Source of the DNA: Scyliorhinus canicula
Lineage: Eukaryota
Direction of reading: 5' to 3'
NCBI RefSeq assembly: GCF_902713615.1
Contig: NC_052158.1
Coordinates: 45,099,159 to 45,163,158 of the forward strand
DNA: 64,000 bases
A model generated the notes under the pieces. That model did not search any database and had not been told where the DNA came from. It saw only the letters and a program-made list of their open reading frames with translations. This document shows, piece by piece, positions 4,680 to 46,760 of the stretch. The position numbers and the translations under genes are program-made. Numbering within the stretch: the stretch's first letter is position 1; every line of letters starts with the position of its first letter.

Positions 4680-5600
4680 CACCATGGATACCACACCAGT
4701 GGTCCACGCACCGTGAAGAGACCCCAACTCCACACAGAGAGTGGTCCACGCACCACGAAGAGTCCCCGACTCCGCACAGAAAGCGATGAAAGTCTCCACA
4801 GCGAGACCACTGCACGACTCCACACAGAAAGCGATGAAAGACTCCACAGCGAGACCACTACACGACTCCGTTGAGAGCGCACAGATCGACTCCACAGCGA
4901 GACCACGGCACGACTCCACACAGGGAACGATGCCAGACTCCACAGAGAGAGCGATACAAGCCTCCACAGCAAGCTCGTTGACAGACTCCACAATGGGAGC
5001 AACTCAAGACGCCAAAGTGCAGTCCATGCATGAACAAGACCATGAAGGTCTATCCACCTCCTCTGAGCAACCAGCAGCAAATGATGCAAGTCTGTCCCGC
5101 TCACATGAACAACAAAAAGACTATGAAAGTCTACCCAGATTACTTGAGCCACCAGAAGAAGACTCTGACAGTCTACCCAGCTTATCTAACCAACAAGAAG
5201 ACACTGAAGGTCTATCCACTGTATTTGAGGCAAGTGACGAAGGCATCACAATTCCCATACATGATGTGCGACATCACAGTGAGACTGACAGATCTCAGCT
5301 CGTATGCACAGAGGCACTCGACAATCCAAGTGAAACTACTCGTGAGTCCAGTGCGACCACGTCAATTGAAACCTCATCCACTTGAGCCTCTCCACAAGAA
5401 AATGAAATCTTGAACATTTTGACTCCAGACGAGAAGCTTCAAAAAACCAAAGATGATTCAAGTGAACCTGAAATGACTCCGACAGAGGATCATCAAGAAA
5501 CCAAAGATGATTCAGGTGAACCAGAATGGATTCCAGGCGGGGAGCATCAACTAGCCAAAGATGATTCAAGTGAACCGGACATGACTCCAGATGGGGAGGA
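4680..5600 (+). repeat. Degenerate tandem repeat blocks inside the LTR element
   Basis: gactccacagcgagacc-type units (4730-4990), gtctacccag-type units (5030-5220), and three 54-bp ccaaagatgattca(a/g)gtgaacc units at 5447, 5501 and 5555. Confidence 0.8.
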
Positions 5601-14789: not shown

Positions 14790-15485
14790 AGTCGCTCCCC
14801 AAGAACTGAGTCATTCGGCCCCTCAATCTCTTCTCCTTCCACCCTCTTTCCTGTGCATCTGCTGATCCCACCTTGAATGCTCTGGTTTATCTTCTGAATC
14901 TGCTGTCAAATACATCCGAGGCCACACATCCCACACTGATATTGTCAGTTTGAAAGCTTATGAGGGTAAAGAATGCTGTTCCCACACTAGTAATCTTCAT
15001 CAATAAGGAGGCACGGTGGTGCAGTGGTTAGCACTGCTCCCTCACGGCACCGAGGACCCACGTTCGATCCAGGTCACTGTGAGTGTGGTTTGCACATTCT
15101 CCCTGTATTTGCATGGGTCTCACCCCCACAACCCAAAAGATATGAAGGGTAGGTGGATTGGCCACGCTAAATTGCCCCTTAATTGGAAAAAAAAAAAGAA
15201 TTGGGTAATCTAAAATGTTTAAAAAGAAATCTTTGTCAAACCTTTACCAGAGAAGAAGTTTTTTAGAGATGGCATCCTGTAATATCCACACTCGTTCAGG
15301 AATGAATATTCAGTGAGTGATTGATTCCGATTCCGATGAAGTTCATCCCATAATATCCACACTAATGTTCAGGCAGTCTGACTATCCTGTGGGCAATCAG
15401 GTGTGGAAATGCCCCTTATGCTGTGTGAGAAGATCCAGCTCAGAGACCTGTTTACTCGGTGCTTTGTGCTGAGCTGTTTGATTGG
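14790..15485 (+). other. Upstream half of a third ZNF 5' module (paralog of rc 23230-23910), lacking the ATG|GT exon
   Basis: cacatcccacactgat..., aatatccacactaatgttcaggcagtctgactatcc...gctgagctgtttgattgg match 25635-25725 and 26035-26167. Confidence 0.75.
15007..15227 (+). mobile_element. V-SINE/HE1-like SINE, short A-tailed form
   Basis: ggcacggtggtgcagtggttagcac...aattggaaaaaa...ttgggtaatctaaaatgtttaaaaa. Confidence 0.85.
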
Positions 15486-15505
15486 AGGAAACCCAACCCG
15501 GGATA

Positions 15506-16834
15506 AGATGCCTGGGGACCATATCCTCTACAAAAGGGTAACCTGTATCCAAACAATCCACGGAGTTCAGACCCAATCCTCCTGGATCTGATCTGCACAA
15601 ATTGGGTTTCAGACACCTCTTACCCAAAACCACACAAATGGAGGCAGCTGCTGATTTTGCCTCCGCAAATCCTGACCTGGCCAATTCCTGGAAGGTGGGA
15701 CATTTGTTCCAGGGTGGTGGAGTACCCTGGGAGTCGGGCTGGATGACCCTGGAATGAGTGTGGAGGATGCTGGGTGAGGGAATGAGCTGGTTGGAAGGCC
15801 CATCTGGGAGAACTGGTACCCCTCACATACACCCCACATCCAAACCATGTGACCAATGTCCCAGCAACCCCCCCCCCCCCACCACACACACAGCATAGCC
15901 CCTCTGTATGTCGCTCTGACAATGACCCCTCCATACTTTACGTGCCAACTTATGTATCCAACCACTCCCATGGTTCCTTATACCCTCCATGGCCAACCTC
16001 TGTCACCCATCCAGTCCACATGGCCCTTTATAGCCTCTGTGCCAATTTTGTGCTAATTCAAACCAGCCCGTGCTGCCCACCCACCAACCATTGCCCATAC
16101 ACCATTCAAACCAACTCACCCAGTATCCACAATGGCCTGACCTCAGGACCCACGCTGATGTTAAATAAACTGAAATTCCAAGTGCCTGTTGCGGACTTTA
16201 TTTTTAGAAACCATTCATTTATTAAAAGAACCCAATGAATACATTTACATTCCTTATAACCAACGTATCATTCAATTGCGTCATCCTGTCTAAAAAAACA
16301 AATATTGAAATTCATAGTCCCATTCGTGTACATAACCACTTGGAGCTGTCCATCAATGATATGGCAGGCACCCAACTGTATCATTCAACACTACCCTTTC
16401 AATCCCTGAGGCTTATCTCAACATACAGAGTGAAAAACAATCATTTTGAGCACTCTGGTTTTTTCAGACTAAAACGTAGGAGTTTTAAATATCTGGTTAG
16501 CTTAACAGCTCCATTTGACAGTTCACCTCGACACTTTTGACAATTGTTTTTGACAGTTCCTTGAGCTCTCGGTTCCAATGTGTTCATTCACTTTTCAAGC
16601 ACATTCATTTCTACTTTCAGTAATGTCAAACGGGAGCTTATCTCCCACAAAGATGCCTGGGGACCATACCCTCCACAAAAGGGTAACCTGTATCCAAACA
16701 ATCCACGGAGTTCAGACCTAATCCTCCTGGATCTGATCTGCACAAATTGGGTTTCAGACATTTCTCACCCAAAACCACACAAATGGAGGCAGCTGCTGAT
16801 TTTGCCTCCGCAAATCCTGACCTGGCCAATTCCT
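15506..16834 (-). repeat. ~185-bp direct duplication (15506-15689 and 16650-16834), each copy starting at a minus-strand AG; possible 3' exons/UTR of the upstream ORF
   Basis: Near-identical copies; rc ...ccttccAG|gaattggccagg and ...gggatcAG|gaattggccagg; donor-like atct|GTGAGT near 16898; minus-strand AATAAA at ~16200-16223. Confidence 0.65.
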
Positions 16835-16945
16835 GATCCCATGAAAATAGGAGGTGCTATAATTTGGGGGAGGGGGGAGGGGGCGGAAAGGACTCACAGA
16901 TTCAGGCCTCTTCTGCCATTGTCCTCACAAGGGACAGGCTCTCTG

Positions 16946-18115
16946 TCATGGCAAAAATCCAGACAGAATATTACCCGCCAGGAGTGGGAGATAATGGCAT
17001 CGAGGAGGCAGTGTTGGAGGGATGGACCCTACTGCCTTTCCTGTCCCTGATGTGACCTCTCCTGTACCAGGGGGATGTCCAGCAGCAGATGTCTCTGCAC
17101 TGGGCTGTTGGTGGTCAGAAGGTGCAGGCTCTGTAATCTGAGGCAGACTCGGTCTCATTTTATTTAAAGTTCCATTGCTTCTTTGTCGAAGCTGGCAAAG
17201 AACCTCATTTTGCTGCTGAAGAATCTCATTCTTTCTTTGTAGATGCTGCTGAAGAATTTCATTGTTTCTTTGTCGATGGTTCTGAAAAATCTCATTGTTT
17301 CTTTGGAGATGCTCAAGAAGAATCTCATTGTTTCTTTGCAGATGATGCTGAAGAATTTCATTGTTTCTTTGCAGATTGTGGTTAACATATATCTTAAATT
17401 CAGTCAAAGATTGTTCAAGCAAGTCAGAAGTGGCCTGATAACTCTCTGTACTTTGAACCTGTTCCTGATGTAAGCTCTCAAGCGCTTTTGGATCATTTTC
17501 ATTTTCTTCACCAGCAGCATGGGCCTGATGTTGTCCGTGTGCTCGTGGAGACGACGGAGCTCCTGCTCCAAAAGCCGCAGGTTCCTCATCTGCGGAAGGT
17601 TCTGAGTGCTCTTGCTCCACCACGGCAGCCAGATCATCACAGGCTTCCTCCTTCACACAAGTCACAATATTTAACTTGAACTCATCAACACTACCCTCCA
17701 AATCAGACATCTTACCCTCCTGATACTCCTCTCCCTCCTCCACTGCAACTGCCATGCCACATTGCTGTGAGGTATTCACCTCTGTCCCTTCCTCATCAGC
17801 CCTTTCAGGAATCTCGGTCGCTGCTGCCAACTCCCCTCCATCACCATCTGATGTGTCCATGGACACCCGTGTATCTGTCAAAGGAAGAAAATCACAATTA
17901 TTATCTTTTGTCGCATAAATTAACTCTCCTCCTGATGGTTTAAACACTCCGCTGCTGACATCACCTTCACTCATTCCCATATCTGATTCACCATTGGTTA
18001 TTGTGGGGTTGGAGAGATCAAACAGCTTGCTCATGAACCCCTCCAGTTCCGTCAGCTCCTTGCTATAAGGAAACCGCCCTCCAGTCGACGAGCACTCCTG
18101 GGCATCCTGGGCCAG
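16946..18115 (-). CDS. Intact ~390-codon coding exon: Harbinger Myb/SANT-protein-like C-terminal region (acidic tract plus 11-aa-repeat coiled coil), Myb domain absent
   Basis: Open 16946-18124; begins KLAQDAQECSSTGGRFPYSKELTELE (resembles the post-Myb KLA..RE..TGGG.P...LT..E block); preceded by polypyrimidine tract and AG; contains VKEE and (LQRNNEILQHH)x5. Confidence 0.6.
   Translation of the reverse strand: MAQDAQECSSTGGRFPYSKELTELEGFMSKLFDLSNPTITNGESDMGMSEGDVSSGVFKPSGGELIYATKDNNCDFLPLTDTRVSMDTSDGDGGELAAATEIPERADEEGTEVNTSQQCGMAVAVEEGEEYQEGKMSDLEGSVDEFKLNIVTCVKEEACDDLAAVVEQEHSEPSADEEPAAFGAGAPSSPRAHGQHQAHAAGEENENDPKALESLHQEQVQSTESYQATSDLLEQSLTEFKIYVNHNLQRNNEILQHHLQRNNEILLEHLQRNNEIFQNHRQRNNEILQQHLQRKNEILQQQNEVLCQLRQRSNGTLNKMRPSLPQITEPAPSDHQQPSAETSAAGHPPGTGEVTSGTGKAVGSIPPTLPPRCHYLPLLAGNILSGFLP
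17222..17380 (-). repeat. 33-bp in-frame coding tandem repeat, about 5 units
   Basis: gaat(c/t)tcattgtttctttgcagatgctgctgaa units encoding LQRNNEILxxH. Confidence 0.9.
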
Positions 18116-18799
18116 CTTTACCAAAAGAAAGAAATTAAAATTAAAAATGAATCATGGTCCAGTCTTGTGACACATTTTCCGACAGTTTTCAGCCTGCACT
18201 CAGGGGGACCTCTGAGTAGAGGTCAATCTTATGACAAAGTCCGGGGTATGGACAAAACAACTGTAGTTTACAAACCCTCAAAATTAGGAAAATAAATCTT
18301 GTGATCTTTTGAACTCAAAAATTATGATTAAAGTTTCAAAAACTAACAGAAATTAAAATTCAGATATTTCCCTCTTCTCCATCATAGGGAAATTTGTGCA
18401 TAAACAACAGTGATTCATGTCTTTTAGTGATGTTTGGCGATCTGGTCAACGGTTAAATTGATCTCTTGAAATGATTGGACTGATAGTGGGACAGGTTGGA
18501 GATAGACATTGCTGAGACAGACAGCGTTTTGGAAGGACAGCTCCCCTGTGTGAGCACTGGAGGGTAAACAGCACAGACAACTTTCAGTGTAAGGGAAGCA
18601 AGTGAGGCACAGTGTGAATGTGCTGGTATCTAGAGGTCGGATGACTGTGAGAATGATTTGTTGCACACCTCGTTTTTGACTGGTTTCTCCCCAGTGTGTG
18701 CAGAGGGCTGATTAGTCTGAGAATGATTTGTTACATACCATACATGAGAATGGTTTGTCCCCTGTGTGAATGTGTTGCTGTGCGCAGAGGGAAAGTGAC

Positions 18800-19408
18800 T
18801 CAGGGAAACATACTGTACATGTGAATATTACAGTGTATACAAGAAGCCAGTGATTCCAAAAATAATTTGTCACATACCTGGCATGGGAAGAGTTGCTCCC
18901 CTGTGTCAACACGTTGATGTCCGTTGAGGTGCGATAACTGCGAGAATGAGTTGTCAAACACCTCGTATGTGAATCGTTTCACCCTTGTGTGAATACGTTG
19001 GTGTCTACGGAGGGTAGATGAATCCGAGAATGATTCGTTACACACCTCACACGTGTAGGGTTTCTCCCCTGTGTGAACCCTTTGATGTGATTGAAGGTTG
19101 GCTTTTCGGTTGAAAGTCTTCTCACAAACATCACACCTGAAGGGTTTCTCCCCTGCATGAAGACGTTTGTGTTCAATGAGGCTTGATGATTGTGTGAATG
19201 ATTTGTCACACAGCTCACATGTGAAGGGTTTCTCACCTGTGTGAATCCTGTGATGTGACTGAAGATGGGAGGATTGGCTGAAAGCTTTCTCACAAACATC
19301 ACACCTGAATGATTTCTCCCCCGTGTGAATCACCTGGTGCCTCAGCAGCATCGTAGAATTCACAAAACGTTTTTCACAAACATCACACTTGAATCGTTTA
19401 TTTTCCAT
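18800..19408 (-). CDS. C2H2 zinc-finger protein (ZNF-minus): 5 intact fingers, then degenerate/frameshifted fingers extending to ~18610
   Basis: MENKRFKCDVC...H.3H with TGEKP-type linkers; finger 6 lost its Cys/His residues; frameshift in finger 7; exon acceptor cctgttttacAG at 19850-19849. Confidence 0.85.
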   Translation of the reverse strand: MENKRFKCDVCEKRFVNSTMLLRHQVIHTGEKSFRCDVCEKAFSQSSHLQSHHRIHTGEKPFTCELCDKSFTQSSSLIEHKRLHAGEKPFRCDVCEKTFNRKANLQSHQRVHTGEKPYTCEVCNESFSDSSTLRRHQRIHTRVKRFTYEVFDNSFSQLSHLNGHQRVDTGEQLFPCQVCDKLFLESLASCIHCNIHMYSMFP

Positions 19409-20143
19409 GTGGCTGCACTTACGGTAACAGTAGTTGTAACAAGTGCACCTTAGAAGACCTTAAGAACCTGTGAAGCCTCCCTCACACTTGAACAGCCACC
19501 CACTGTAGGAATGAGTCAGTGGTTCATGAGGCTTGACGAATGATTGAAGCTCTCACCACACTTGGAGCCCACTCACCACATCTTCCCAGCCTCACCCTGA
19601 CCGATCACCCACAGCTGAACCTTCGGAAAGGTTGGTTCTGATGGAAGGTTCCACACCACTGGCCAGTTTCAGATCTGATGATATGTCAAAGCACCCCTGA
19701 CTCGACTGATTTCACTTCTCGGTGTTGAGCAATGCTGCAAAGAGACTGGATGTCTTCCCACAGTTGTGCAGTTGTTCCCTGGGTGATGGTCAGGATCTAT
19801 CTGTGGTGTCTATCCTTTCTGTATTCTCTGTAGTACGGTGCAAACCTTCTGTAAAACAGGAAAAGGAAACATGATTTTCTCCAACTCCCTCTCCTTTCCT
19901 GAAGGGACTGACTCTCAGTTAGAGACTGTTCCACAGTGAATATCACAGTCTGCTATTCCTCCGAGTCGGGATGAGATAAAAGTCCTTTCTTTTTCCTCAC
20001 TTGACTATCACATATTGTTCATTCCTGTTGATTCCCTTTGTTCCTATTTTTAAAAATTTTGTCTTTATCATTATTGGTTCATTGATTGTTAACTTAAGTC
20101 CAGCAGAGGAAATAAGAAACTCAAAAGTGTCAAAACAGGATGC

Positions 20144-22962: not shown

Positions 22963-23910
22963 CTCACTCAGACTGCACATCCCAAATTCAGCTCTCACAC
23001 ACAGCACTGGAAAAAAAACTATCAAATCCAAGCCCAGGCTTTTGGGAAAGGCCGAGACCTTCAGGTAAAATCTTCAAAGAAGACATTTCAGTAAATGTGC
23101 CTCTGCTCCTCCCAGATAATTACACCTCACCTTCTCATCTTCAGCAATGACCCATCAACATAACTCAGCCTGTAAATCAGAAGGGAAATGTTTCCAATAA
23201 ACACCCTGAATATCCAACACACAGCAAATCAAACAGCTCAGCACAAAGCACCGAGTAAACAGATCTCTGAGCTGGATCTTCTGACACAGCATAAGGGGCA
23301 TTTCCACAGCTGATTGCCCACAGGATAGTCAGACTGCCTGAACATTAGTGTGGATATTGTGCAATGTAATGATTGTAAATTCTGCTCCTTCACTCACCAT
23401 CTCCTGACTTGGTTTAGAGTCCCTACAGGAAGTGAAGCAGCTGTGGTAGAGGAAGAGGAGACAATGGGCAGAGTGGGTGGGCTCTCTGATTGACGTCTCT
23501 CACAGACAATCCAAATATTTCTGCAGTAACAGGACTTTCCTGAAGTTTGGGAAACTGACCGGGGAAACGGAGGAGACTTTGAGCAGCAGATCAGGTGGGG
23601 ATTTAAACTTGTCATTGTCCCATCTGAATAAAACCTCACTTATTGCAGCTGCTGTCTCAGTTCTTCAGGTAAACGTGTGACAGAGATTTCTAGTGTGGGA
23701 ATAGCATTCTTCATCCTCGGAGGCTTCCAAACTGACAACATCAGTGTAGAATGTGCTTGACAGCAGACAGATGAGGAAGCCTAGCATCTAAGGCAGCGAT
23801 GACTTGCAGTAAAGGGATCAGCACATCATGCACAGGAAGGGGGGGGGGGGGGGGGGGGGGGAGCGTGGGGAGACACAGAATGGTCCTGAGAGGAGAATGA
23901 CCCAGTATTC
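22963..23910 (-). other. 5' non-coding exons of ZNF-minus: ATG|GTGAGT-ended exon (23440-23398 or longer) and 39-nt micro-exon (23169-23131)
   Basis: Canonical AG/GT sites conserved in the inverted paralog 25645-26428. Confidence 0.7.
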
Positions 23911-25540: not shown

Positions 25541-25644
25541 GTGCATGTGTGGATCGTACCATTCCATGTGATTGATATCTTGGAACTGGAAGCTGTAGGT
25601 CTTCATCTTCTGATGTTTTCAAACACATTCGAGGCTACACATCC

Positions 25645-26510
25645 CACACTGATGTTGTCAGTCTGGAAGCCTCCGGGGATGAAGAATGCTGTTCCCACAG
25701 GGGAAATCTCTGTCACACGTTTACCAGGGGAACTGAGACAACAGCTGCAATAAGTGAGGTTTTATTCAGATGAGACAATGACAAGTTTAAATCCCCACCT
25801 GAGCTGCTGCTCAAAGTCTCCTCCGTTTCCCCGGCCAGTTTCCCAAACTTCAGGAAACTCCTGTTACTGCAGAAATATTTGGATTGTCTGTGAGAGACGT
25901 CAATCAGAGAGCCCACCCACTCTGCCCATTCTCTCCTCTTCCTCTACCACAGCTGCTTCACTTCCTGTAGGGACTCAAAACCAAGTCAGGAGATGGTGAG
26001 TGAAGGAGCAGAATTTACAATCATTACGTTGCACAATATCCACACTAATGTTCAGGCAGTCTGACTATCCTGTGGGCAATCAGCTGTGGAAATGCCCCTT
26101 ATGCTGTGTCAGAAGATCCAACTCACAGACCTGTTTACTCGGTGCTTTGTGCTGAGCTGTTTGATTTGCTGTGTGTTGGATATTGAGGGTGTTTATTGGA
26201 AACATTTCCCTTCTGATTTACAGGCTGAGTTTTGTTGATGGATCATTGCTGAATATATGAAGGTGAGGTGTAATTATCTGGGAGGGCAGAGACACATTTA
26301 CTGAAACGTCCTCTTTAAAGATTTTACCTGAATGTCTCGGTTTTTCCCAGAAGCCTGGGCTTGGATTTGATAGTTTAGCCCAGTGCTGTGTCTGAGAGCT
26401 GAATTTGGGATGTGCAGTCTGAGTGAGTGCAGTGTTTAATTTCCCAGGATAAACCAGAATCCTTCAATCAGTTACACTGAAGCAATATTTTCCTTAGCTT
26501 CCAGCAGTTC
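25645..26510 (+). other. 5' non-coding exons of ZNF-plus: ATG|GTGAGT-ended exon (25953-25995 or longer) and 39-nt micro-exon (26224-26262)
   Basis: ctctcctcttcctctaccacAG|...gagatg|GTGAGT and ttctgatttacAG|...gaag|GTgagg; inverted paralog of 22963-23745. Confidence 0.7.
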
Positions 26511-27500: not shown

Positions 27501-28429
27501 GAATATACTTCATACTGTTTTGTTACTGATGTTCCTGTCCCGTTTGTTTTCTGCAAATAATATCAGAAAAGGGGAGAAATTTCAAAATCCCCAGTGAATA
27601 AACCTTTCTCCAGAGTCTTTTTTATATTCAACACACTCTCAAGTGTAAAACTGGCCTTCACCAGAACTACTCGAGCTCATAGTGAATTGATAGCCTGTTT
27701 TACATTCCGCCCGAGTCTTTTTCATTGTCCTCACGGTGCCTGGGAAATATGGGTAGCCACGTTGTCTGTTCCTGGTCAATATCCAGTATCCCTGCTGGAA
27801 ACAGAGGCTGTGTGACAGTCAAGTGAGTACCTGATCCCCATACAGGGAAATAGCAGATAAAAATTCACTGTGGAACAGTCTCTAACTGAGGAGTCAGTCC
27901 CTTCAGCAAAGGAGGAGAGGGAGTTGGAAGAAATCATTTTTCCTTTTCCTGTTTTACAGAAGGATCACATAACTACACCAGAGATTACAGAGAGGATAGA
28001 CACTGCAGATAGATCCTGACCATCACCCAAGGAACAACTGCACAACTGTGGGAAGACATCTAGTCCCTTCACAGCATTACTCAACACAGAGAAGGTTGTG
28101 TAGTGAAAGCATCATCTGGAAATCGGCCGGGTCAGGGAGCTTTGACACATCGTTAGATTTGAAGCTAGTCAGTGGTGTGGAATATTCTATCAGAACAAAC
28201 CTTTCCGAAGGTTCAGCTGTGGGTGATCAGTCAGGATGAGGTTGGGAAGAAATGTGATTGGGCTCCAAGTGTGGTGAAAGCTTCAATCATTCATCGAGCC
28301 TCATGAACCACTGACTCATTCCGACAGGTGAGAGGCTGTTCAAGTGTGAGGTGACTGAGGAGGGCTCCATATAATCTCCTAATACTCAAGGTGCTACTGT
28401 TGTACCACCTATATTTGAAGGACAGCCAC

Positions 28430-29293
28430 ATGGCAGAGAAAGCATTCAAGTGTGAGGTGTGTGACCGAGCCTTCGCTCAATCATCGACACTCGTGATTCA
28501 CCGGCACGTTCACACTGGGGAGAAACCATTTACTTGTGAGGTGTGTAACAGAGGATTTGCACAATCTTCAGCCCTAGTGAAACACCGACGCATTCACACA
28601 GGAGAGAAACCATTCACGTGTGAATTATGCAACAAATCATTTTCAGTGTCATCGAACCTCCGCACACACCAACGCATTCACACGGGGGAGAGGGCATTCA
28701 AGTGTGGGGTTTGCAATAAGGCGTTTGTGAAGTCTACGAGCCTCCTGATACACCAGAGAATTCACACAGGAGAAAAACCCTTCAAGTGTGAGGTATGTGA
28801 GAAAGCCTTTACCTGCTCCTCTGATCTGCTGATCCACCAGAGGATTCACACAGGGGAGAAACCCTTTAAATGTGAGGTGTGTGATCGAGCCTTCGCACAG
28901 TCATCAACACTCCTGAAGCACCAACGCATCCACACTGGGGAGAAGCCGTTCAAGTGTGATGTGTGTGAGCAGGCCTTCCTGAAGTCCGGGAACCTCCGCG
29001 TACACCAACGGATGCACACTGGGGAGAAACCGTTCAAGTGTGAGGTTTGTAACAGGGGCTTTGCTCAATCATCGACTCTGGTGAGCCACTGGCGCATTCA
29101 CACAGGGGAGAAACCATTCACTTGTGAGGTGTGCAACAAATCGTTCTCGAGGTCATCGACGTTTCGTGTACATCAACGCATTCACACCGGGGAGAAACCA
29201 TTCAGATGCGACGTGTGCAACAAATCCTTTTTGAGCTCGTCAAAGCTTCTGCTGCATCAGAGGATTCACACAGGAGAAACTATTCAAATGTGA
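28430..29293 (+). CDS. C2H2 zinc-finger protein (ZNF-plus): 287 aa, 10 intact tandem fingers, no effector domain seen
   Basis: ATG at 28430 (cacATGg); ten F.C..C...F.....L..H...H units with TGEKP-type linkers; exon acceptor tttcctgttttacAG at 27958-27959. Confidence 0.93.
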   Translation: MAEKAFKCEVCDRAFAQSSTLVIHRHVHTGEKPFTCEVCNRGFAQSSALVKHRRIHTGEKPFTCELCNKSFSVSSNLRTHQRIHTGERAFKCGVCNKAFVKSTSLLIHQRIHTGEKPFKCEVCEKAFTCSSDLLIHQRIHTGEKPFKCEVCDRAFAQSSTLLKHQRIHTGEKPFKCDVCEQAFLKSGNLRVHQRMHTGEKPFKCEVCNRGFAQSSTLVSHWRIHTGEKPFTCEVCNKSFSRSSTFRVHQRIHTGEKPFRCDVCNKSFLSSSKLLLHQRIHTGETIQM

Positions 29294-31856: not shown

Positions 31857-33820
31857 GCGGATTAATAAGATTATTGTGGGCTTCGTGTGGGGGAGGGGGG
31901 CAAGCCCCTGCGGGTGAAGAGGGCAATGCTGGAACGGAGCCGTGGAGAATGGTGGGCTGGCGCTGCTGAATTTCAGTAATTACTATTGGGTGGCCAACAT
32001 AGCCATGGTGGGACGGTGGCTGGTGAGGGGGGAGCCGGCGTGGGTGCGCATGGAGGCGGCCTCGTGTAAGGGCACAAGTTTAGGGGCACTGGTGACGGCG
32101 CCCCTGCCGTTCCTGCCGGTGCGTTACTCCACCAGTCCGGTGGTGATGGTGACCCTGAGAATCTGGGGACAGTGGAGGAGACGTGGGGCAGAGGGGGCAT
32201 TAGTGTGGTCCCCGATCTGCAATAACCATAGTTTTGTCCCGGGGAGGATACATGGGGGGTTCCGTATTTGGCAGAGAGCGGGAATAGAGAGGATGGGGGA
32301 CTTGCTCTTGGAAGGAGGATCCAGCGGAGGATCCGCTGGAGGATAAGTTTGCGTTAGCTGGAGGGAATGATCTCCGATATTTACAGGTACAGGACTTTTT
32401 GCAGAGGCAGGTACCAACCTTCCCACTCCTGCAGTTAAGGGGAATTCAGGATAGGATGGTTTCTGGAGGATGGTAGGGGAGGGGAGTGTCTTGGACATAT
32501 ATAAAGAGCTTATGGGGTCGGAGGATACGCAGACCGAGGAGCTGAAGCTTAAGTGGGAGGAGGAGCTGGAGCTGAAGCTTAAGTGGGAGGAGGAGCNNNN
32601 NNNNNNNNNNNNNNNNNNNNNNNNNNNNNNNNNNNNNNNNNNNNNNNNNNNNNNNNNNNNNNNNNNNNNNNNNNNNNNNNNNNNNNNNNNNNNNNNNNNN
32701 NNNNNNNNNNNNNNNNNNNNNNNNNNNNNNNNNNNNNNNNNNNNNNNNNNNNNNNNNNNNNNNNNNNNNNNNNNNNNNNNNNNNNNNNNNNNNNNNNNNN
32801 NNNNNNNNNNNNNNNNNNNNNNNNNNNNNNNNNNNNNNNNNNNNNNNNNNNNNNNNNNNNNNNNNNNNNNNNNNNNNNNNNNNNNNNNNNNNNNNNNNNN
32901 NNNNNNNNNNNNNNNNNNNNNNNNNNNNNNNNNNNNNNNNNNNNNNNNNNNNNNNNNNNNNNNNNNNNNNNNNNNNNNNNNNNNNNNNNNNNNNNNNNNN
33001 NNNNNNNNNNNNNNNNNNNNNNNNNNNNNNNNNNNNNNNNNNNNNNNNNNNNNNNNNNNNNNNNNNNNNNTGGGAGGTGAGATGGAGGATGGTTTGTGGC
33101 GGACGCGCTAGGAAGGGTCAGTGCCACCGCAACATGTGCCAGACTCAGCCTGATGCAGTTTACGGTTGTTCACCGAACTCGCATTCCAGTGGCCCGGATG
33201 AGCAGATTCTTTGGGGTGGAGGACAGGTGTGTGAAGTGTGCGGGGGAGGGGGGGGGGGGGGGGGGGCGGCAGCGAACTATGTCCATATATTTCGGGCATA
33301 TCTGAAACTGAGGGGATTTTGGCAGGGGTTTGCCGACACCATGTCCACGGTATTAAATACGAGGGTGGCAATGAGTCCGGAGGTGGCGATTTTTGGGGTA
33401 TCGCAGGACCCGGGAATCCAGGAGGATAAAGAGGCAGATGTTCTGGCCTTTTGCTTCCCTGGTAGGCCGGAGGCGTATATTGCTGGCATGGAGGGACCCT
33501 GAAATCGAAGACCTGGCTTTCAGACATGGCAGTCTTCCTTTGTCTGGAAAAAATTAAGTTCGCCATGAGAGGGTCTCTAGTAGGGTTCGCCCAGAGGTGG
33601 CAGCCATTCGTCGACTTCCTCGCAGAGAATTAAACGTCAGCAGAAGGGGAGGGGGGTTAGGTTACTGTAGCGTAGGGGGGTAAGCAATGGCAGGACCTGT
33701 CGGAGAGAGTTGCGGAATTTGCACTATGTATATATTTTTTTCTTGTTATTTATATTGTTGATTTTGTTTCTGTTAAACTGCCAAAGAAAATACCTCAATA
33801 AAACGTTTACTAAAAAAAAA
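31857..33820 (+). mobile_element. 5'-truncated degenerate L1-clade LINE (ORF2 C-terminus) spanning the assembly gap
   Basis: GGLALLNF..YYW, TLRIWGQWRR, CARLSLMQF, C.KC; AATAAA plus polyA at 33797-33821. Confidence 0.88.
32597..33070. other. Assembly gap (N run)
   Basis: 474 N bases. Confidence 1.
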
Positions 33821-37337: not shown

Positions 37338-37564
37338 GGGCAGCACGGTGGCCTAGTGGTTAGCACAACCGCATCACGGCGCTGAGGTCCCGGGTTCGAT
37401 CCTGGCTCTGGGTCACTGTCCGTGTGGAGTTTGCACATTCTCCCCGTGTCTGCGTGGGTTTTGCCCCCACAACCCAAAAATGTGCAGAGTAGGTGGATTG
37501 GCCACGCTAAATTGCCCCTTAATTGGAAAAAATAATTGGGTAGTCTAAATTTATAAAAAAAAAA
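37338..37564 (+). mobile_element. V-SINE short A-tailed form
   Basis: Intact head, polyA, TSD gtccatgactg. Confidence 0.9.
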
Positions 37565-39248
37565 GTCCATGACTGTTCAGTGGAGGTGTTATACACATGG
37601 ATCTTCACTGTTTTTCTCTGTTCTAATGTTGTCCTATTGGTATCTGCTTCTTGTATTCCCCAAATTGGTGCTGAGTTTCCTGTAGTCAACAGAAATACCA
37701 GAGTACCTATACTACAAATCATATCCCCCATTGTTAACTGTAGCCCTCGTTATAACCAATCAATTCTACTTGTATTCTGGATCCGAAGCTTCCTTATTTT
37801 TAGGCATATTCCCATCCTTTCCTGTGCCGATTTTCTTCCACATATCTATCTTCCGAGTATTTTCTCTATCTACAAAATTATAATTAACAATTTGGATCAG
37901 GTCCCTACCATTTTCCATTCAACGTATATTTCTTGGAGGTTCTAGAAGTACCCTCTCCAGAACTTCCAGACCTCCTTGTATTAATATTACTGTCTTTCCT
38001 CCCATTGTTTTTGCACGTACTATTTCGAAGGCCCCCTCTTGCTCCTCATCTGATCTTTCCTGTCCTGCCCAAGCAGTTTGTCACGTTCCATCTGTATCAT
38101 CTGTCGACTCTCACCATCATCTTCTTTTCCTAGTATCTTGTTTTTCTGTAACTGTCTTTTATATTCTGTAATTGCTTTGTTGCTTGTTTTATGAGGATGT
38201 TTTACTACTTGGACTATTTCTTGCTCAGTATCTCGGTCTATCTATAATTTTTATTACTCCGGAATAGACTGTTCCTGCTGCTGCTGCCGCCTCGACATGC
38301 CTCTTTCCAGTGACTATCATTGTGTTTGCTTAGACTTTATCTGTCCATTTACATAATGCCTTCACTGAACCTATTGTGTCTGTAGTTTGGGTTTTTCTGG
38401 CTACCCTGACAAAGAAACGGTCTGCCCCATCAGGTGCAGTTTCCCTGACCCAACTTAATCTTTCTTGTTTTAAAGTTTTCCACAATCCTTGGATTTCTCC
38501 ATCTCTCTTCCCCCTTATTCCAGGAGAGCAGAGTTACCGTGGTAGTCATTACTTCGAGATTTTAAATTTTCTATTTTAATCTGCTCCTAATTCGTCCTTC
38601 TCTGCTGCAGCACTGAGATTAAAGCTCGGCTCTCCTTTCTGGATTACCTCCAAGGTACTGAAGTACTCTGAGCTGTTTTAATAAACCAATATTTCAGGTT
38701 TAAATCAGATAAGGGTGGGAAGGCGACTTTGCCTAGTGAGAAAGGGCGTCCCCGATCTTCTAAGTTCCTTTGTCACTTATCCGACCTTACTTAGAGCTCT
38801 TGGGTTTCCTTCTTAACTGTTAATGGACCCGACTATTACCAGGTTGGCGTATTCCAGTTTAATGTTGCTTACTAACTCTTCTGGGTTATGAGTACAGTGT
38901 CAATCGACTACTGGCACTTCCGCCCCTGTTCTCTGGCCCCACAATCCACAGATTGGTCCTGAAATAAGCTTAAAATAGCAATCGCTATTAAGCATAACGC
39001 GATGGATATGGTTTGACTATAAAAACCACATATTGGCTTGAAACTTCTATCTCCTGTAAAATTGAAGTTATGGGGGACGACTCTCCTTTGAAAATTCCTA
39101 TTATTTCGAAAAGTGTAGCAGATCTATCCACAACCAGAAGAGGGAGCCAGACTCCACCAGATGTCTCTAGTGAATATATAATCGGTGATCTTACGAATTC
39201 TATCTGTCATCATTTTAATTTGCAAAAAGCAATTGCGGAGATTGAGTT

Positions 39249-39783
39249 CTCTGTATCTAACCCCGTGCTGTACCTGTCCTGGGAGTGTTTGATGGGGCAG
39301 TGTAGAGAGAGCTTTACTCTATCTAACCCCGTGCTGTATCTGTCCTGGGAGTGTTTGATGGGGACAGTGTAGAGGGAGCTTTACTCTGTATCTAACCCCG
39401 TGCTGCACCTGTCCTGGGAGTGTTTGATGGGAACAGTGTAGAGGGAGCTTTACTCTGTATCTAACCCTGTGCTGTACCTGTCCTGGGAGTGTTTGATGGG
39501 AACAGTGTAGAGGGAGCTTTACTCTGTATCTAACCCCGTGCTGTACCTGTCCTGGGAGTGTTTGATGGGGACAGTGTAGAGAGAGCTTTACTCTGTATCT
39601 AACCCCGTGCTGTACCTGTCCTGGGAGTGTTTGATGGGGACAGTGCAGAGGGAGCTTTACTCTGTATCTAACCCCGTGCTGTACCTGTCCTGGGAGTATT
39701 TGATGGGGACAGTGTCGAGGGAGCTTTACTCTGTATCTAACCCCGTGCTGTACCTGTCCTGGGAGTGTTTGATGGGGACAGTG
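39249..39783 (+). repeat. 69-bp tandem satellite, about 7.7 copies
   Basis: Unit ctctgtatctaaccccgtgctgtacctgtcctgggagtgtttgatggggacagtgtagagggagcttta. Confidence 0.95.
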
Positions 39784-39829
39784 AGATGGTTTTTGTTGCT
39801 CCCACACTCTGAGGGAGTGCTGTATGTGA

Positions 39830-42800
39830 ATACTGAGGGAATGGGAGATACGTTCGTTTGTGGCTATTTGCTCTGTTAATATTAAAGGAAATTGTAAACG
39901 CTGAAAAAAAAAAATACAACATTACTCAAGGCCAATGGTTCTTCGAAGATGTTAAAATAGTTTGGGGAAAGATCACCCGTTTAAGAAAAATTGACCGCAT
40001 TAAATGGTCACTTGTGGTTCCGTCAGCAAAGGTCAGCAGCTCAACAAAAAGACTATGAGGACGCTATTAAATCTGCCAGGGAGGAACTCCAAATAACCTC
40101 TGCGCTTTTACAAGACTCAAATTACAAGCTCAAGAGGTCTGACCAATGTAGATCCTTTTTACACTATCAAAACTGTGAACTCCAAAAACAAATTGCAGAC
40201 CTTAAACGGAAAACTACCGAGCTTCAGGCCACTATTGCCAACTTCAAAGTACAGTCTCTGATCTTCAGAGCATTAATGCAGAAGTTCAGACTAAAAATAT
40301 CAAACCCCAAACCATTAATGCTGAAATTCAAACTCAAAATATTGAACTTCAGACCATTTCTACTGAAGTTCACATGGAAAATACTGAGCTCCAGAACATT
40401 ATTAGAGGCGAGATCATTTTTGGGACTTTGCAATTTTAACAGAAATTGGATTGATTCCTTTACTCAGCTGGCTCAACCATTAAATGATCTCCTAAAAGGC
40501 AACCGGAAATCAAAAGACTCAGTTAACCTCACATTGGAACAGAAAGAGTCATTCTTGAACCTGAAACATGCATTCTGCACAGCACCTGCACTTGGCATTC
40601 CACACAATGGAAGACCTTTCACTATGTTTGCTCATGAGAAGGACGGCTACATGACAGCAGTACTAGCCCAAGAACATGGTGACCAGTTAAGACCTGTAGG
40701 ATACTACTCTGCCAAATTCAACAATGTTGCACTGGCATATGGCAGCTGCCTCAGAGCCAGGTGGAAGCCACAAGTCGAGTTTTGATGCATACAGCAGGCC
40801 TTATCTTGGAACAGCAGTTGACTATTAAATGCCCCCACGCAGTCCATTCTCTACTTTCCATGAACAGAGCATCACAAGTCACGTCAACCAGATGGACCAG
40901 ATGGACAGCAGTGTTGGAAGCGCCTAATCTTTACTTCCACCGAGCCAGTCCAGTAAATCCTTCAACTTTGCACCCGCTTCCCGAAGAGCAACGGGGGGAG
41001 AAATAGAAGAACATGACTGTGTGGAAGTAAGAAAATAAATGGAAGAGGCACGCCTGATAGAAGAAGAACCACTGCAGAACCCAGATTTGATTCTATTTAC
41101 AGATGGTTCCCCCTTTATTGATAAAGGTGTCAGCAAAGCTGGATGGGCAGTCACCAGCCTGTATGAAATAGTGGCGGAAGGAAGTTTGTCCCAAGGAACA
41201 TCAGCTCAACAGGCCGAATTAAGGGCTTTAACAGAAGCATGTCATGTGGCAAAAGATCAAACAGCCAACATATATACGGACTCCAGATATGGTTTTGGAG
41301 TAGCCCGTGATTTTGGTCATTTATGGAAGAAAAGAGGATACCTTATCACACCTATACGGAATGGGAAAGAAGTACAGGACCTCCTAGAAGCCATGGCTTT
41401 ACCAAAAGAAGTCTCTATTCTCAAATGTAAGGCTCATACTCAAGAAGACACTGGAAACTAAAGGAAATGCCTTTGCAGACCGAGCAGCAAAGAAAGCTAC
41501 TTCCAAGGAACATCCTTCAGCAGCTCCAAGGCACATCTACCATTTGGGAGTGCCTTCTACCATCTATGTGAAATGCAACATAACTGAACATCACTGACAT
41601 TGACACAAGAAAGATGGCCATAGCTAGATTCAGGTATTGAGGAGTATAATGATGATATTTGGAGAGAAGTTAAGACTGATAAACCAGTGGCACCACAGTC
41701 ACTGATGCCATTCCTGGTACAACAGATCCATTCATGGGGACATCTGCCCCCTCAAAAGATGATGGATCGATTCCACAGGAGTTGGTGTGGCAAAGGATTC
41801 AAAAACATGCACAATCGCTGTGTTACATGTCAAAAGAACAACTTAGGACCTGTCACAAAGATGCCTCAGCTAAGAGCTCCTGCCCCTCCAGGACCATTTC
41901 AGCACATTGTTGCTCGTTCTGGTGAGTGTGCTTTACGCTCAATTGGCTCTGTTTTATTCCCTTGCTCTGGAGTCGCCAGGTATCTTTATGATACCACCAC
42001 GAGGTTCAAGTTCAAGTGCTGATCAATAACTCAATACACCAGTTAGTAAGGTTCAAATCAAAACGCATTTATTATATACACAGTCAATCGCTACTCATGC
42101 ATAAATACTACAAAACTAGACTACTTCTTCCACTAAAGGCCAATATTTATCTTCTGGAAAAGGAACCCACTGGGTCAGGGAACAGTGGCCTCTTGTTTAA
42201 TCCTGAAACTGCAGGCTTCCAGCTGGTACGGACTAAGGGTCAGGAGCGCCTATCTCATAGCGTGCGTTGACTGGACACTTACTTGTTGGTGCAGCTGCAA
42301 GGCAGTTCAGGGTCAAGTGTTGTTTCGGTCTGCTGCGTGACCCTGCCGAGAAGTCTATCGAGAGAAACTGCCAAGAGAGCGAATTGAACTTGGAACCTGT
42401 CTTTTATAGGCCCCAAGGGCTTCGCGCCCTTTTGGGCGGATCTCCGTACCCGACTCCAATCGATTGGATCACGTACCAATCGATCGGTTTGAATTCCCCA
42501 ATACTGGGGCTGTTTCCTGATCGCTGGGCGGTCCTTGGATGCTCGTTAGCCTCTTTTGTCTTGGACTCCTGCTGGCGCCGAGAAGTCTGGTTTTACCTCG
42601 ATTATCCAAACTGTTGCTGTTGTGCCTGGGAATCGCTCATTAATATTCAGTTTGCTGGTTTCAATGCTGTCTGCTTTCTGCAACTCGAATATACAGAAGA
42701 ACTCTGCAAACTGCTTGTTTTCTCATACTGTCCAATTTTCCCTGCGTTCTTTGCGAATCTCCATTTTAAGTCGGGGAGTGGCCAACCCAGGTGGCTACAA

Positions 42801-45180: not shown

Positions 45181-46760
45181 CCCTAAACCAGCCCAGCACT
45201 TTTTCAATATTGGCTTCCCAATAATAGAACAGCAAATTAGGTAAGGCTAAGCCCACTGGTTGTCTTTCTCTCTGCAGAAACATTCTGCGAATCTTTGGGG
45301 TCCTTCCTGCCCAAATGAAAGAGGTAATCAATTCATTGATTTTAACAAAGAATGTTTCTATGACATTGGAAAAGAAACAAAAACCTCGGAAGGACGTTAA
45401 TTTTAACTGTCTGAATCCTGCCCGCCAAGGACAGGGGGATGTTATCCCACCTTTGTAAAACTGCTTTGACCTCATTCACCAGCTGAGCAAAATTAAGTTT
45501 GTGAAGAGAGGCCCAGCTGTGGGCCACCCAGATTCCCAAATAACAGAAGCTAGATCTGGCAAGGCGAAAAGGTAGCAACCCTAGATCAGTTCCCCTTCCT
45601 GGGGTGCTCACCGGAAAATATTTGTCTTGTCCAGATTTACCCTGTACCCTGAAAAGGAGCCGAAACTCCTCAGTAGCTTCATTATCCCATCCATCATGGA
45701 GACTGGGCCCGTGATATAAAGAAGCAGATCAGCTGCATACAGGGACAACCTATGCTCTTTCCCACCCCTCTCTATCCCCTTCCATCTCCTGGAACATTTT
45801 AACAACACACAAACAAACGCAACCCCAATCCTTGACCTTGTTAAATGCCACCCTTTTCTTTTTATAGCCATGCTTCCATATCCTGATAGAGGCTAATGGC
45901 ATGGTCCTCCCATTTGTAGTTATGGTGCCCAAAGTGACTCTCCTAGCAAGGCTTCTGACAGCAAGTAATGAATAGCCTGATCAGGAAGGGACAACACCCT
46001 CGCCCACCATCTTCCCAAACATCTTCGACATATATTTCAGTCAAGTGTAGGACCTCAGTGGGCAGCACGGTGGCTCAGTGGATAGCACTGCTGCCTCACG
46101 GCGCCGAGGTCCCTGGTTCGATCCCGGCTCTGGGTCACTGTCCGTGTGGAGTTTGCACATTCTCCTCGCGTTTGCGTGGGTTTCGCCCCCACAACCCAAA
46201 GATGTGCAGAGTAGTTTGGCCACACTAAATTGCCCCTTAATTGGAAAAAAATGAATTGGGCACTCTAAATTTAAAAAAAAGTGTAGGACCTCTATTCCCT
46301 CCAGCAGCCCCAAGACGATAAGATTTTGCCTCTTGGAACGATTTTCTAAGTCATCTACTCTGTCATGCAGAAATTTGTTATTATCAGCCAGCATTACCAT
46401 CTCAGCCTCGAAAGAGACAATCTGTTCACTCTGCATCAAAAGAGCCACCTCCATGCCCTGCACAACTCTGGTATGCATCGTTACCATTTTGTCTGGTTTT
46501 GCCAGCATCGATCTAATGGGAGCAAACCAGGGTCTCCTCAATTTATTTATGGAGGTCCTCAAAGACAGTCTGCCATTGTTTTGAATTCCTCCGCTAAGAT
46601 GCTCGTAAGCATCTCAATTGATAATGAGGTAACTCTAGACTTGGCAGCAGCCACCACCATTACTTTTTCTGATGAGCATCGAGAGGAATTTTATTTGGAT
46701 GACGATTCTGTGCTTGCAACACAATGCAAACCTGATTGAGTTGGACTGCATTCACACGCG
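45181..46760 (-). mobile_element. Old, internally deleted L1-clade LINE (ORF1 coiled coil plus RT C-terminal pieces)
   Basis: VDDLENRSKRQNLIVLGLLEGIE; SLYAADLLLY; SLAGRIQTVKINVLPRFLFLFQ; GLALPNLLFYYW. Confidence 0.8.
46060..46280 (+). mobile_element. V-SINE short A-tailed form
   Basis: 13-bp TSD agtgtaggacctc. Confidence 0.9.

What the first reader, a model, noticed from the sequence alone, without database searches (positions are those of the whole stretch)
16946..19408. Candidate ZNF-Harbinger chimeric gene: zinc fingers replacing the Myb DNA-binding domain of a transposon protein
Seen: a stop-free 1170-nt minus-strand exon (18115-16946) with a polypyrimidine tract and two phase-0 acceptors (AAG ending at 18116, CAG ending at 18107) lies about 0.76 kb downstream of the ZNF-minus fingers. 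A phase-0 donor CAG|GTATGT at 18878/18877 sits just before the finger array frameshifts. Joining them gives an in-frame ~566-aa protein: 5 intact fingers, FPCQ|LAQDAQECSSTGG, an acidic region, a VKEE SUMO-consensus motif and a coiled coil. Knowledge: KLA..E...TGG..P...LT..E resembles the block following the Myb_DNA-bind_5 domain of Harbinger/NAIF1-type proteins, whose C-terminal part binds the partner transposase. Inference: the Myb exon is gone and C2H2 fingers now supply DNA binding, giving a KRAB-independent effector module in a shark ZNF cluster. Caveat: donor-like sequences arise easily from C-x-V-C codons, and an identical GTATGT is present in ZNF-plus at ~28793.
Basis: partly seen in the sequence, partly recalled or inferred. 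Interest (0 to 1): 0.85.

Follow-up and report, generated by a model that had tools for sequence, protein, structure and literature searches.

The report
Shark zinc-finger gene with Myb-gene tail
This is a real, already annotated catshark gene in which five DNA-binding zinc fingers are spliced onto the acidic, coiled-coil back end of a Myb/SANT-like (transposon-partner type) gene that has lost its own DNA-binding part; it is one of dozens of such shark genes, apparently a shark-specific way of equipping zinc-finger proteins with a partner module.

Summary
Joining 19408-18878 to 18115 on the minus strand gives an in-frame product. With one more small intron removed (17964-17875), the window translates exactly to RefSeq XP_038673243.1 (Scyliorhinus canicula "zinc finger protein 93-like X1", 536 aa). 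An alternative donor at 17992 gives isoform X2 (527 aa).

The tail has no Pfam domain. It is clearly homologous to the part after the Myb_DNA-bind_5 domain in elasmobranch Myb/SANT-like genes, such as the basking-shark 404-aa protein.

This is not a one-off chimera. About 60 relatives in Scyliorhinus and Mustelus carry fingers plus this tail, with the same junction. They form one clade, sister to lamniform genes that still carry the Myb domain.

Fingers, post-Myb block and coiled coil are strongly conserved against the S. torazame orthologue; the acidic linker is not.

A direct Harbinger origin, transposase binding and effector activity remain untested. I found no paper on the family. This scan met the same family twice before on other DNA of this genome (s1-216876, s1-249160).

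The parts
18878..19408 (-). First coding exon. ATG at 19408. Five intact C2H2 fingers with TGEKP-type linkers, a sixth degenerate finger, and the first Cys+1 of a seventh. Ends at donor CAG|GTATGT (18878|18877), which lies inside a C-x-V-C motif.
   Evidence: Pfam zf-C2H2 1.9e-34 and zf-H2C2_2 3e-44. Identical to P0062 residues 1-177. Recognition helices are identical in the S. torazame orthologue.
18116..18877 (-). Intron of 762 nt. Its 5' part (about 18877-18500) holds three or four decayed, frameshifted fingers with stops, including further C-x-V-C donor-like sites. Its 3' end holds a polypyrimidine tract and the acceptor AAG (18118-18116). 18235-18167 is a weak in-frame resemblance to Myb helix 3.
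   Evidence: Three-frame translation and tblastn. The Myb-like relic is not significant (E 0.33 locally; not recovered by a profile search of the whole window).
17965..18115 (-). Second coding exon. It encodes the last residues of the ancestral Myb helix 3 (LAQDAQE) and the conserved post-Myb block (STGG.FPY.KELTELEGFMSKLF, predicted short helix at 18055-18014). Isoform X2 uses an alternative donor at 17992.
   Evidence: Exact match to P0062 and P0001. The motif is conserved in distant PF13873 proteins. AF2 helix at residues 198-211, pLDDT about 72. No substitutions against S. torazame, apart from a 3-aa indel.
17875..17964 (-). Small phase-1 intron of 90 nt, in frame and stop-free.
   Evidence: GT...AG boundaries. 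Absent from P0062, P0001 and most family members, present as coding in P0004.
16946..17874 (-). Last coding exon: acidic, predicted disordered region; psiKxE motif VKEE (17656-17645); long helix (17491-17156); a divergent C-terminal tail; stop TGA 16948-16946.
   Evidence: AF2: residues 356-467 form a helix at pLDDT 93-98 and the rest is under 60. 100 of 104 family-conserved positions are retained. psiKxE is present in all ZNF-linked tails that cover that column.
17211..17376 (-). 33-nt tandem repeat, 5 copies, encoding the 11-residue units LQRNNEILQxH of the coiled coil.
   Evidence: Tandem Repeats Finder: period 33, 5.0 copies, 84% matches. One substitution in 74 residues against S. torazame.
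16197..16223 (-). Two AATAAA signals (16223-16218 and 16202-16197) about 0.72 kb downstream of the stop. Candidate polyadenylation signals.
   Evidence: Pattern search. No transcript data were available.

Best explanation
The locus is a working protein-coding gene of the small-spotted catshark (RefSeq 'zinc finger protein 93-like/107-like'). It belongs to a multigene family found in carcharhiniform sharks.

In this family a C2H2 finger exon is spliced to the back end of a Myb_DNA-bind_5 (NAIF1/MSANTD/Harbinger-Myb-like class) gene. The donor lies inside a finger, right after the first Cys+1 of a C-x-V-C motif.

Shown:
- the exon structure and its identity with the annotated protein;
- homology of the tail to the post-Myb part of elasmobranch Myb genes;
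- monophyly of the finger-linked tails, sister to lamniform genes that keep the Myb domain;
- the same donor position in lamniform isoforms that join two fingers to the Myb exon;
- region-specific conservation of fingers, post-Myb block and coiled coil.

Inferred:
- A fingers+Myb+tail gene existed before lamniforms and carcharhiniforms split. In carcharhiniforms the acceptor moved to the end of Myb helix 3, which dropped the Myb domain, and the gene then multiplied with diversified fingers.
- The fingers now choose the DNA site. Contact positions -1, 3 and 6 are the most variable positions in the family.
- The roughly 110-residue hendecad coiled coil makes homo- or hetero-oligomers.
- The acidic region, with its clade-specific psiKxE (SUMO-consensus) site and the post-Myb helix, recruits partners.
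- The tail thus plays the role that SCAN, BTB or KRAB play in other zinc-finger families.

In this copy the splice donor has moved up the finger array, leaving three or four dead fingers in the intron. The S. torazame orthologue has the same junction, so the move predates the split of the two species.
For: - Exact translation to XP_038673243.1 and XP_038673247.1. The annotated CDS span is 2463 bp, equal to the finding.
- 61 relatives at E below 1e-20. Most carry C2H2 Pfam domains plus this tail, with the junction ...PF.C[KEQ]|(V)KLA.N.QE.
- P0063 (Cetorhinus, 404 aa) has PF13873 at residues 11-88 (49.8 bits against a cutoff of 21.7), followed by the same tail. An exhaustive phmmer search gave 209 relatives, all PF13873-type where checked. 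The Atlas places P0063 in PF13873 and NAIF1 clusters at 0.91-0.94.
- Tree: 57 carcharhiniform tails form one clade (SH-aLRT 96), the lamniform Myb-bearing clade has 97, and the Myb-only paralogues are the outgroup.
- Lamniform isoforms P0039, P0065 and P0073 join ...KPFKCE|KMAVQEIV..., the same donor position.
- Orthologue P0003: fingers 97.2% identical with all five recognition helices identical; post-Myb block plus coiled coil 1 difference in 111; acidic region 33 in 170 (Fisher p = 3e-7).
- The window copy keeps 100 of 104 positions that are at least 90% conserved in the family.
- AF2: long helix at pLDDT 93-98. 33-nt x5 repeat. psiKxE is present in all finger-linked tails covering that column and absent from Myb-type relatives.
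- No TIRs around the tail.
Against: - No transcript or protein evidence could be read here. The junctions rest on RefSeq (Gnomon) models, whose RNA support I could not inspect.
- No codon-level dN/dS was possible, because DNA of the other sharks could not be fetched.
- The tail is mostly predicted disordered and matches no solved or Swiss-Prot fold, so its activity is inferred from composition and conservation only.
- This copy has a degenerate sixth finger, dead fingers in its intron, a shifted acceptor (AAG at 18116 instead of the family's position six bases upstream) and a replaced C-terminus that lacks the basic RGRGRRRKN-type end of most paralogues. It could therefore be a decaying member.
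- The proposed order of events (Myb lost after fusion) rests on one tree with a weakly supported base (66) and on annotated lamniform isoforms whose finger exon lies about 40 kb upstream.
Confidence: 0.75

Rival explanations
1. The tail still does what a Harbinger Myb-like protein or NAIF1 does. It binds a HARBI1-like or transposase partner and brings it into the nucleus, so the fingers direct a nuclease-like partner to chosen DNA sites.
For: The tail descends from a PF13873 gene. Harbinger Myb-like proteins and NAIF1 bind their transposase or HARBI1 (cited in PMC9710019, read). HARBI1 and NAIF1 are reported from cartilaginous fishes onward (PMC9392472). The post-Myb block is conserved from sharks to teleost PF13873 proteins.
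Against: I could not find which part of the Myb-like protein binds the transposase; the primary paper was not held. No transposase gene lies beside any relative examined, and none of the relatives scanned against Pfam has a transposase domain. The long coiled coil and the psiKxE site are not general PF13873 features.
Confidence: 0.12
2. This particular copy is a decaying or non-functional family member. The RefSeq model would then be a read-through or opportunistic splice of a dying finger gene onto a neighbouring tail exon.
For: The sixth finger is degenerate and there are three or four dead fingers in the intron. The ancestral acceptor is lost and a nearby AAG is used instead. The C-terminus is replaced. 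The tail is 88% identical to its orthologue, against 97% for the fingers.
Against: The S. torazame orthologue has the same junction, the same degenerate finger and the same new C-terminus, so the state is old and the frame has stayed open in both species. Differences are strongly non-uniform (1/111 against 33/170, p = 3e-7). 100 of 104 family-conserved positions are kept. The five recognition helices are identical between the two species.
Confidence: 0.1
3. The tail ORF is a copy of a young, mobile Harbinger-type element (its Myb-like ORF) that happens to lie downstream of a finger array.
For: PF13873-type proteins are encoded by Harbinger elements (PMC9392472, PMC9710019). There are many copies in the genome.
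Against: No TIRs flank the ORF and there is only one tail copy in the 64-kb window. The Myb domain is missing. The copies are consistently preceded by finger exons with a conserved ME.K.F.C start and the same junction. There is a conserved internal intron. S. canicula and S. torazame copies pair off one to one in the tree.
Confidence: 0.03

Closest known systems
Myb_DNA-bind_5 (PF13873) proteins: NAIF1, MSANTD3/4, MYPOP-like proteins and Harbinger Myb-like ORFs
   Same: The tail is homologous to the region just after the PF13873 domain of elasmobranch members (P0063, P0212). It shares the post-Myb motif K.A.N...TGG.P...LT..E with distant members. [quoted passage not shown] The Atlas places the Myb-bearing relative near NAIF1.
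   Different: This gene has no Myb domain. Only the last few residues of helix 3 remain. It has C2H2 fingers instead, and it belongs to a multi-copy clade rather than a single-copy conserved gene.
SCAN-ZNF and KRAB-ZNF families of tetrapods, and FiNZ-ZNF of cyprinid fish (lineage-specific zinc-finger families with an associated non-finger domain)
   Same: One conserved non-finger module is joined to variable finger arrays. There are dozens of clustered paralogues, and the finger contact residues are the most variable positions. From my own knowledge, SCAN is likewise a mobile-element-derived oligomerisation module.
   Different: The module is C-terminal to the fingers and is reached by a donor inside a finger. 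It is an acidic region plus a hendecad coiled coil with no Pfam model. None of the 61 relatives carries KRAB, SCAN or BTB in the precomputed Pfam lists. Its activity is unknown.
Host-transposase fusion genes (for example KRAB or SCAN fused to a transposase DNA-binding domain; from my knowledge of Cosby et al. 2021, not read here)
   Same: A new transcription-factor-like gene was built by splicing host exons to mobile-element-family exons.
   Different: The polarity is reversed. Here the host fingers supply DNA binding, and the non-DNA-binding part of the transposon-family protein is what was kept.

Membership tests
Poly-C2H2 zinc-finger proteins | Tandem C-x2-C-x12-H-x3-H fingers joined by TGEKP-type linkers | tested here: met
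   Five intact fingers; Pfam zf-C2H2 1.9e-34 and zf-H2C2_2 3.1e-44; regex extraction.
Myb_DNA-bind_5 / NAIF1 / MSANTD / Harbinger Myb-like proteins | A trihelix Myb/SANT-like DNA-binding domain (PF13873) | tested here: not met
   No PF13873 hit in the tail or in the whole protein. The exon starts at the position aligned with residue 86 of P0063, whose PF13873 match spans residues 11-88. A profile search of the window found no Myb domain.
Myb_DNA-bind_5 / NAIF1 / MSANTD / Harbinger Myb-like proteins | Descent from a PF13873 gene (homology of the remaining sequence) | tested here: met
   The tail is 67% identical to Cetorhinus P0063 (family range 47-76%), and P0063 carries PF13873. phmmer gives E 1e-100 or lower for the nearest finger-linked representatives. 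The post-Myb motif is shared with distant PF13873 proteins.
Myb_DNA-bind_5 / NAIF1 / MSANTD / Harbinger Myb-like proteins | Physical interaction with a PIF/Harbinger transposase or HARBI1 | not testable with these tools
   Needs co-IP or two-hybrid experiments. Known only from the literature on Harbinger3_DR and NAIF1 (PMC9710019).
Mobile PIF/Harbinger element | Terminal inverted repeats, a 3-bp target-site duplication and a DDE transposase ORF next to the Myb-like ORF | tested here: not met
   No inverted repeats bound the tail or the gene. There is only one tail copy in the window. No transposase domain in the fetched relatives scanned against Pfam, and none among annotated neighbours where listed.
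Lineage-specific ZNF family with an associated domain (KRAB/SCAN/FiNZ type) | One conserved non-finger module shared by many paralogues that have divergent finger arrays | tested here: met
   61 relatives; 57 tails in one clade; tails 63-76% identical to P0063 across shark orders; finger positions -1, 3 and 6 have the highest entropy, 3.0-3.1 bits.
Lineage-specific ZNF family with an associated domain (KRAB/SCAN/FiNZ type) | The module has a demonstrated effector or oligomerisation activity | not testable with these tools
   Only predicted: a long helix at pLDDT 93-98 and a psiKxE site. Needs tethering and biophysical assays.

The most novel reading that the evidence does not exclude
Carcharhiniform sharks would have built their own large family of sequence-specific regulators by recycling the non-DNA-binding half of a transposon-family Myb gene as a universal C-terminal module. 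That module would combine coiled-coil oligomerisation with a SUMO-dependent acidic effector. On this reading the family plays the transposon-policing role that KRAB zinc-finger proteins play in tetrapods and FiNZ proteins may play in cyprinids. The lamniform finger+Myb+tail isoforms would preserve the intermediate step.
Probability: 0.3. Interest if true: 0.75.

Novelty: new variant of a known kind. Interest (0 to 1): 0.6.

Why it matters
Zinc-finger families with a lineage-specific partner domain (KRAB, SCAN, ZAD, FiNZ) are a major route by which animals evolve new gene and transposon control. None has been described for sharks in the papers I could search.

This family shows a clean, traceable route. 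A finger exon was spliced to a Myb-type gene, the Myb domain was then dropped, and the gene was then amplified. Living sharks seem to keep the intermediate form.

It also shows a simple mechanism for rebuilding such genes. Every C-x-V-C finger carries a latent splice donor in the right phase, so the array can be shortened or re-joined without breaking the frame.

If the tail proves to be a repressor or an oligomerisation module, it gives a new compact effector domain and a test case for convergent evolution of KRAB-like systems.

Tried and rejected
- Pfam on the tail gave only sub-threshold coiled-coil noise (Macoilin 15.8 bits, cutoff 32).
- The PDB sequence search gave only a chance-level leucine-zipper hit, USF2 at E 0.17.
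- Foldseek against Swiss-Prot models gave nothing, with TM no higher than 0.11 by query. The model is mostly disordered.
- DNA of relatives could not be fetched: 'sample's file too large' for S. canicula, S. torazame and Cetorhinus, and P0001 is not on record. There is therefore no codon-level dN/dS and no DNA comparison of introns.
- Myb relic in the intron. tblastn extended a P0039 alignment to 18235. On its own the 23-residue match scores E 0.33, and an elasmobranch Myb profile did not find it in a six-frame scan of the window. I keep it only as a hint.
- Two teleost PF13873 loci (L001, L002) were checked for a neighbouring transposase-sized ORF. None was seen, and I did not follow this further.
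- The Sinzelle et al. 2008 paper on the Harbinger Myb-like/transposase interaction was not held.
- Literature searches for shark zinc finger/Harbinger/Myb, Myb_DNA-bind_5 plus zinc finger, cartilaginous-fish ZNF effector domains, and Scyliorhinus zinc-finger expansion found no description of this family.
- The first exhaustive search job was lost on the remote machine and was rerun.
Full report
**1. What is in the sequence**

On the minus strand an ORF runs from 18124 to 16946 (392 codons from TTG). It lies 0.76 kb downstream of a C2H2 finger ORF (19408-18800).

The finger ORF has five intact fingers (Pfam zf-C2H2 1.9e-34, zf-H2C2_2 3e-44). A sixth unit has lost two cysteines.

The donor CAG|GTATGT sits at 18878|18877, inside a C-Q-V-C motif. 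The acceptor TTTCTTTTGGTAAAG|CTG sits at 18116|18115.

Joining them is in frame and gives 566 aa.

**2. It is an annotated gene**

A search with the tail found [quoted passage not shown] (P0001, XP_038673247.1). Its cluster mate is "zinc finger protein 93-like isoform X1" (P0062, XP_038673243.1/245/246).

Splicing the window as 19408-18878 + 18115-17965 + 17874-16946 reproduces P0062 exactly (536 aa). Using the alternative donor at 17992 reproduces P0001 exactly (527 aa).

The annotated CDS span of 2463 bp equals the finding's span. The window is therefore from the S. canicula assembly GCA_902713615.2.

The one correction concerns the "1170-nt exon". It contains a further phase-1 intron (17964-17875, 90 nt) that is in frame and stop-free.

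I could not inspect the RNA evidence behind the RefSeq models.

**3. What the tail is**

The tail has no Pfam domain. It has about 60 strong relatives (E 1e-20 to 1e-219) in S. canicula, S. torazame, Mustelus asterias, Cetorhinus and Carcharodon.

In the two lamniform sharks the homologous gene encodes a 404-aa protein (P0063). It has a full Myb_DNA-bind_5 domain (PF13873, residues 11-88, 49.8 bits against a cutoff of 21.7), followed directly by ...AKLAHNAQERLLIGGHVPYIKDLTDQEEFTRKLF... and the same acidic and coiled-coil regions.

The catshark exon begins at the position aligned with residue 86 of P0063. In the AlphaFold model this lies in the last turns of Myb helix 3 (helix 62-95).

An exhaustive phmmer search with P0063 gave 209 relatives:
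- Myb-bearing full-length homologues in S. canicula itself (LOC119952172, P0212, 389 aa, on another chromosome), S. torazame, Mustelus, Heterodontus, Pristiophorus, Pristis and Narcine;

The Atlas places P0063 among PF13873 clusters (0.94) and the NAIF1 cluster (0.91).

The Myb domain is gone and what follows it has been kept.

**4. It is a family, not a single chimera**

Almost every carcharhiniform relative has the same architecture. It starts ME.K.F.CDVC, carries one to eight fingers, and then has the junction ...PF.C[K/E/Q]|(V)KLA.N.QE.

In a tree rooted on the Myb-only paralogues:
- the 57 finger-linked carcharhiniform tails form one clade (SH-aLRT 96);
- this clade is sister to the lamniform Myb-bearing clade (97);
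- the bamboo-shark Myb gene lies at the base (base weakly supported, 66).

S. canicula and S. torazame copies pair off as orthologues. The window's partner is P0003.

Lamniform RefSeq isoforms (P0039, P0065, P0073) join two fingers to the Myb exon as ...KPFKCE|KMAVQEIV.... The donor is again right after Cys+1 of a finger. In Cetorhinus that finger exon lies about 40 kb upstream.

The simplest history is as follows:
1. A finger exon became an alternative 5' exon of the Myb gene before lamniforms and carcharhiniforms split.
2. In carcharhiniforms the acceptor moved to the end of helix 3, dropping the Myb domain.
3. The unit then amplified.

This order of events is an inference.

A stretch just upstream of the acceptor, in the tail's frame (18235-18167), resembles Myb helix 3 (7 of 23 residues). 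It is not significant (E 0.33; not found by a profile scan).

**5. Is it under constraint?**

I could not obtain DNA from other sharks. I therefore used the protein orthologue P0003:

| Region | Conservation against P0003 |
|---|---|
| Fingers | 97.2% identical |
| Post-Myb block (178-213) | no substitutions |
| Coiled coil (384-457) | one substitution |
| Acidic region (214-383) | 33 of 170 differ |

All five recognition helices are identical.

The contrast between block plus coiled coil and the acidic region gives Fisher p = 3e-7. This is what purifying selection on specific parts would produce, and not what neutral decay would.

The window copy also keeps 100 of the 104 positions that are at least 90% conserved across 50 family members.

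Across 109 fingers of the family, positions -1, +3 and +6 have the highest entropy (3.0-3.1 bits). This is the usual signature of paralogues with different DNA targets.

**6. Anatomy of the tail and likely mechanism**

AlphaFold with the family alignment predicts (the same pattern appears in P0063):
- a short helix at residues 198-211 (pLDDT about 72);
- a disordered acidic stretch;
- one long helix at residues 356-467 (pLDDT 93-98).

The long helix is encoded partly by a 33-nt x5 tandem repeat (17211-17376). This gives 11-residue units LQRNNEILQxH, a hendecad pattern typical of coiled coils.

A psiKxE site (VKEE at 17656-17645) is present in every finger-linked tail that covers the column. 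It is absent from the Myb-type relatives, so it arose with the finger-linked clade.

My best reading:
- the fingers select the DNA;
- the coiled coil makes homo- or hetero-oligomers within the family;
- the acidic region with its SUMO-consensus site and the post-Myb helix recruit partners.

Only the sequence features are shown. The activities are inferred.

**7. Peculiarities of this copy**

- The intron begins inside the finger array. It contains three or four further fingers that are now frameshifted and carry stops (about 18877-18500). Two of them still carry C-x-V-C donor-like sites. Because each such finger offers a donor in the same phase, the splice can hop up the array when downstream fingers die. 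The S. torazame orthologue has the same junction, so the hop predates the split of the two species.
- The family's usual acceptor (giving |VKLA) is TG here, and an AAG six bases downstream is used.
- The C-terminus (...GKAVGSIPPTLPPRCHYLPLLAGNILSGFLP) replaces the basic RGRGRRRKN-type end of most paralogues. It is shared with S. torazame.

These features make "decaying member" a fair rival. The conservation pattern argues against it.

**8. Not a mobile element**

- No inverted repeats bound the tail or the gene.
- There is one tail copy in the window.
- The tail has a conserved internal intron.
- No transposase domain was found in the fetched relatives scanned against Pfam, and none among annotated neighbours where these were listed.

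The Harbinger connection therefore rests on membership of the PF13873 group. The literature derives this group (NAIF1, MSANTD3/4) from Harbinger Myb-like genes (PMC9392472; PMC9710019).

**9. Novelty**

The gene is in RefSeq under a generic name. I found no paper describing a shark zinc-finger family with this tail. The catshark genome paper does not mention zinc fingers at all.

This scan has met the same family twice before on other DNA of this genome (s1-216876, s1-249160). Those follow-ups reached the same general reading.

- the exact identity with the RefSeq isoforms;
- the rooted tree with the lamniform Myb-bearing sister group;
- the shared donor position;
- the region-specific conservation test;
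- the clade-specific psiKxE site;
- the hendecad repeat;
- the donor-hopping explanation for the dead fingers in the intron.

I class it as a new variant of a known kind: a lineage-specific zinc-finger family with a mobile-element-family accessory module.

Noticed in passing
window 28391-29293 (+), with 27974-28250 against 19581-19835: A second finger gene lies head to head with this one. It is a 10-finger ORF starting MAEKAFKCEVC and ending right after the array. Its 5' flank and fingers are inverted copies (71-89%) of those of the studied gene. No tail exon follows it anywhere in the window (tblastn). An assembly gap lies at 32597-33070.
   Followed up: partly
P0039, P0065 and P0073 (Cetorhinus and Carcharodon RefSeq isoforms): Lamniform sharks have isoforms with two fingers + Myb_DNA-bind_5 + tail, alongside a Myb+tail isoform without fingers (P0063). 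This is a possible living intermediate of the fusion. In Cetorhinus the finger exon lies about 40 kb upstream.
   Followed up: partly
P0171, P0087 and P0097 (hits; Pfam): Other proteins combine Myb_DNA-bind_5 with KRAB (P0171, source species not looked up), or with C2H2 fingers (P0087 from Pleurodeles waltl; P0097). Fusions between this Myb class and zinc-finger or KRAB modules therefore seem recurrent.
   Followed up: no
window 15505-15690 and 16650-16835; also 15344-15483, 23227-23366, 26032-26166: Direct repeats that are 97% identical lie 1145 bp apart, just downstream of the gene's stop within its likely 3' UTR. Related pieces occur elsewhere in the window. This is an unidentified interspersed repeat.
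   Followed up: no
window 15021-15100, 37353-37432, 46075-46154, 58009-58088: Four copies of a tRNA-like head (…GGTTCGATCC…), probably a tRNA-derived SINE family.
   Followed up: no
window 23108-23755 and 25638-26285: A pair of 648-nt inverted repeats, 96% complementary and 1.9 kb apart. This is either a large TIR-bounded element or a local inverted duplication.
   Followed up: no
window 52728-54200; 39248-39868; 4719-5030: Three tandem arrays: a satellite of about 20-nt period spanning about 1.5 kb, a 69-nt x9 array, and a 24/48-nt repeat.
   Followed up: no
First finger of family members (for example P0062 residues 6-28, and P0004, P0019, P0035): The first finger (F.CDVC.K.FVNST.LLRH..IH) is conserved across paralogues whose other fingers differ. 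It may have a shared, non-specific role.
   Followed up: no
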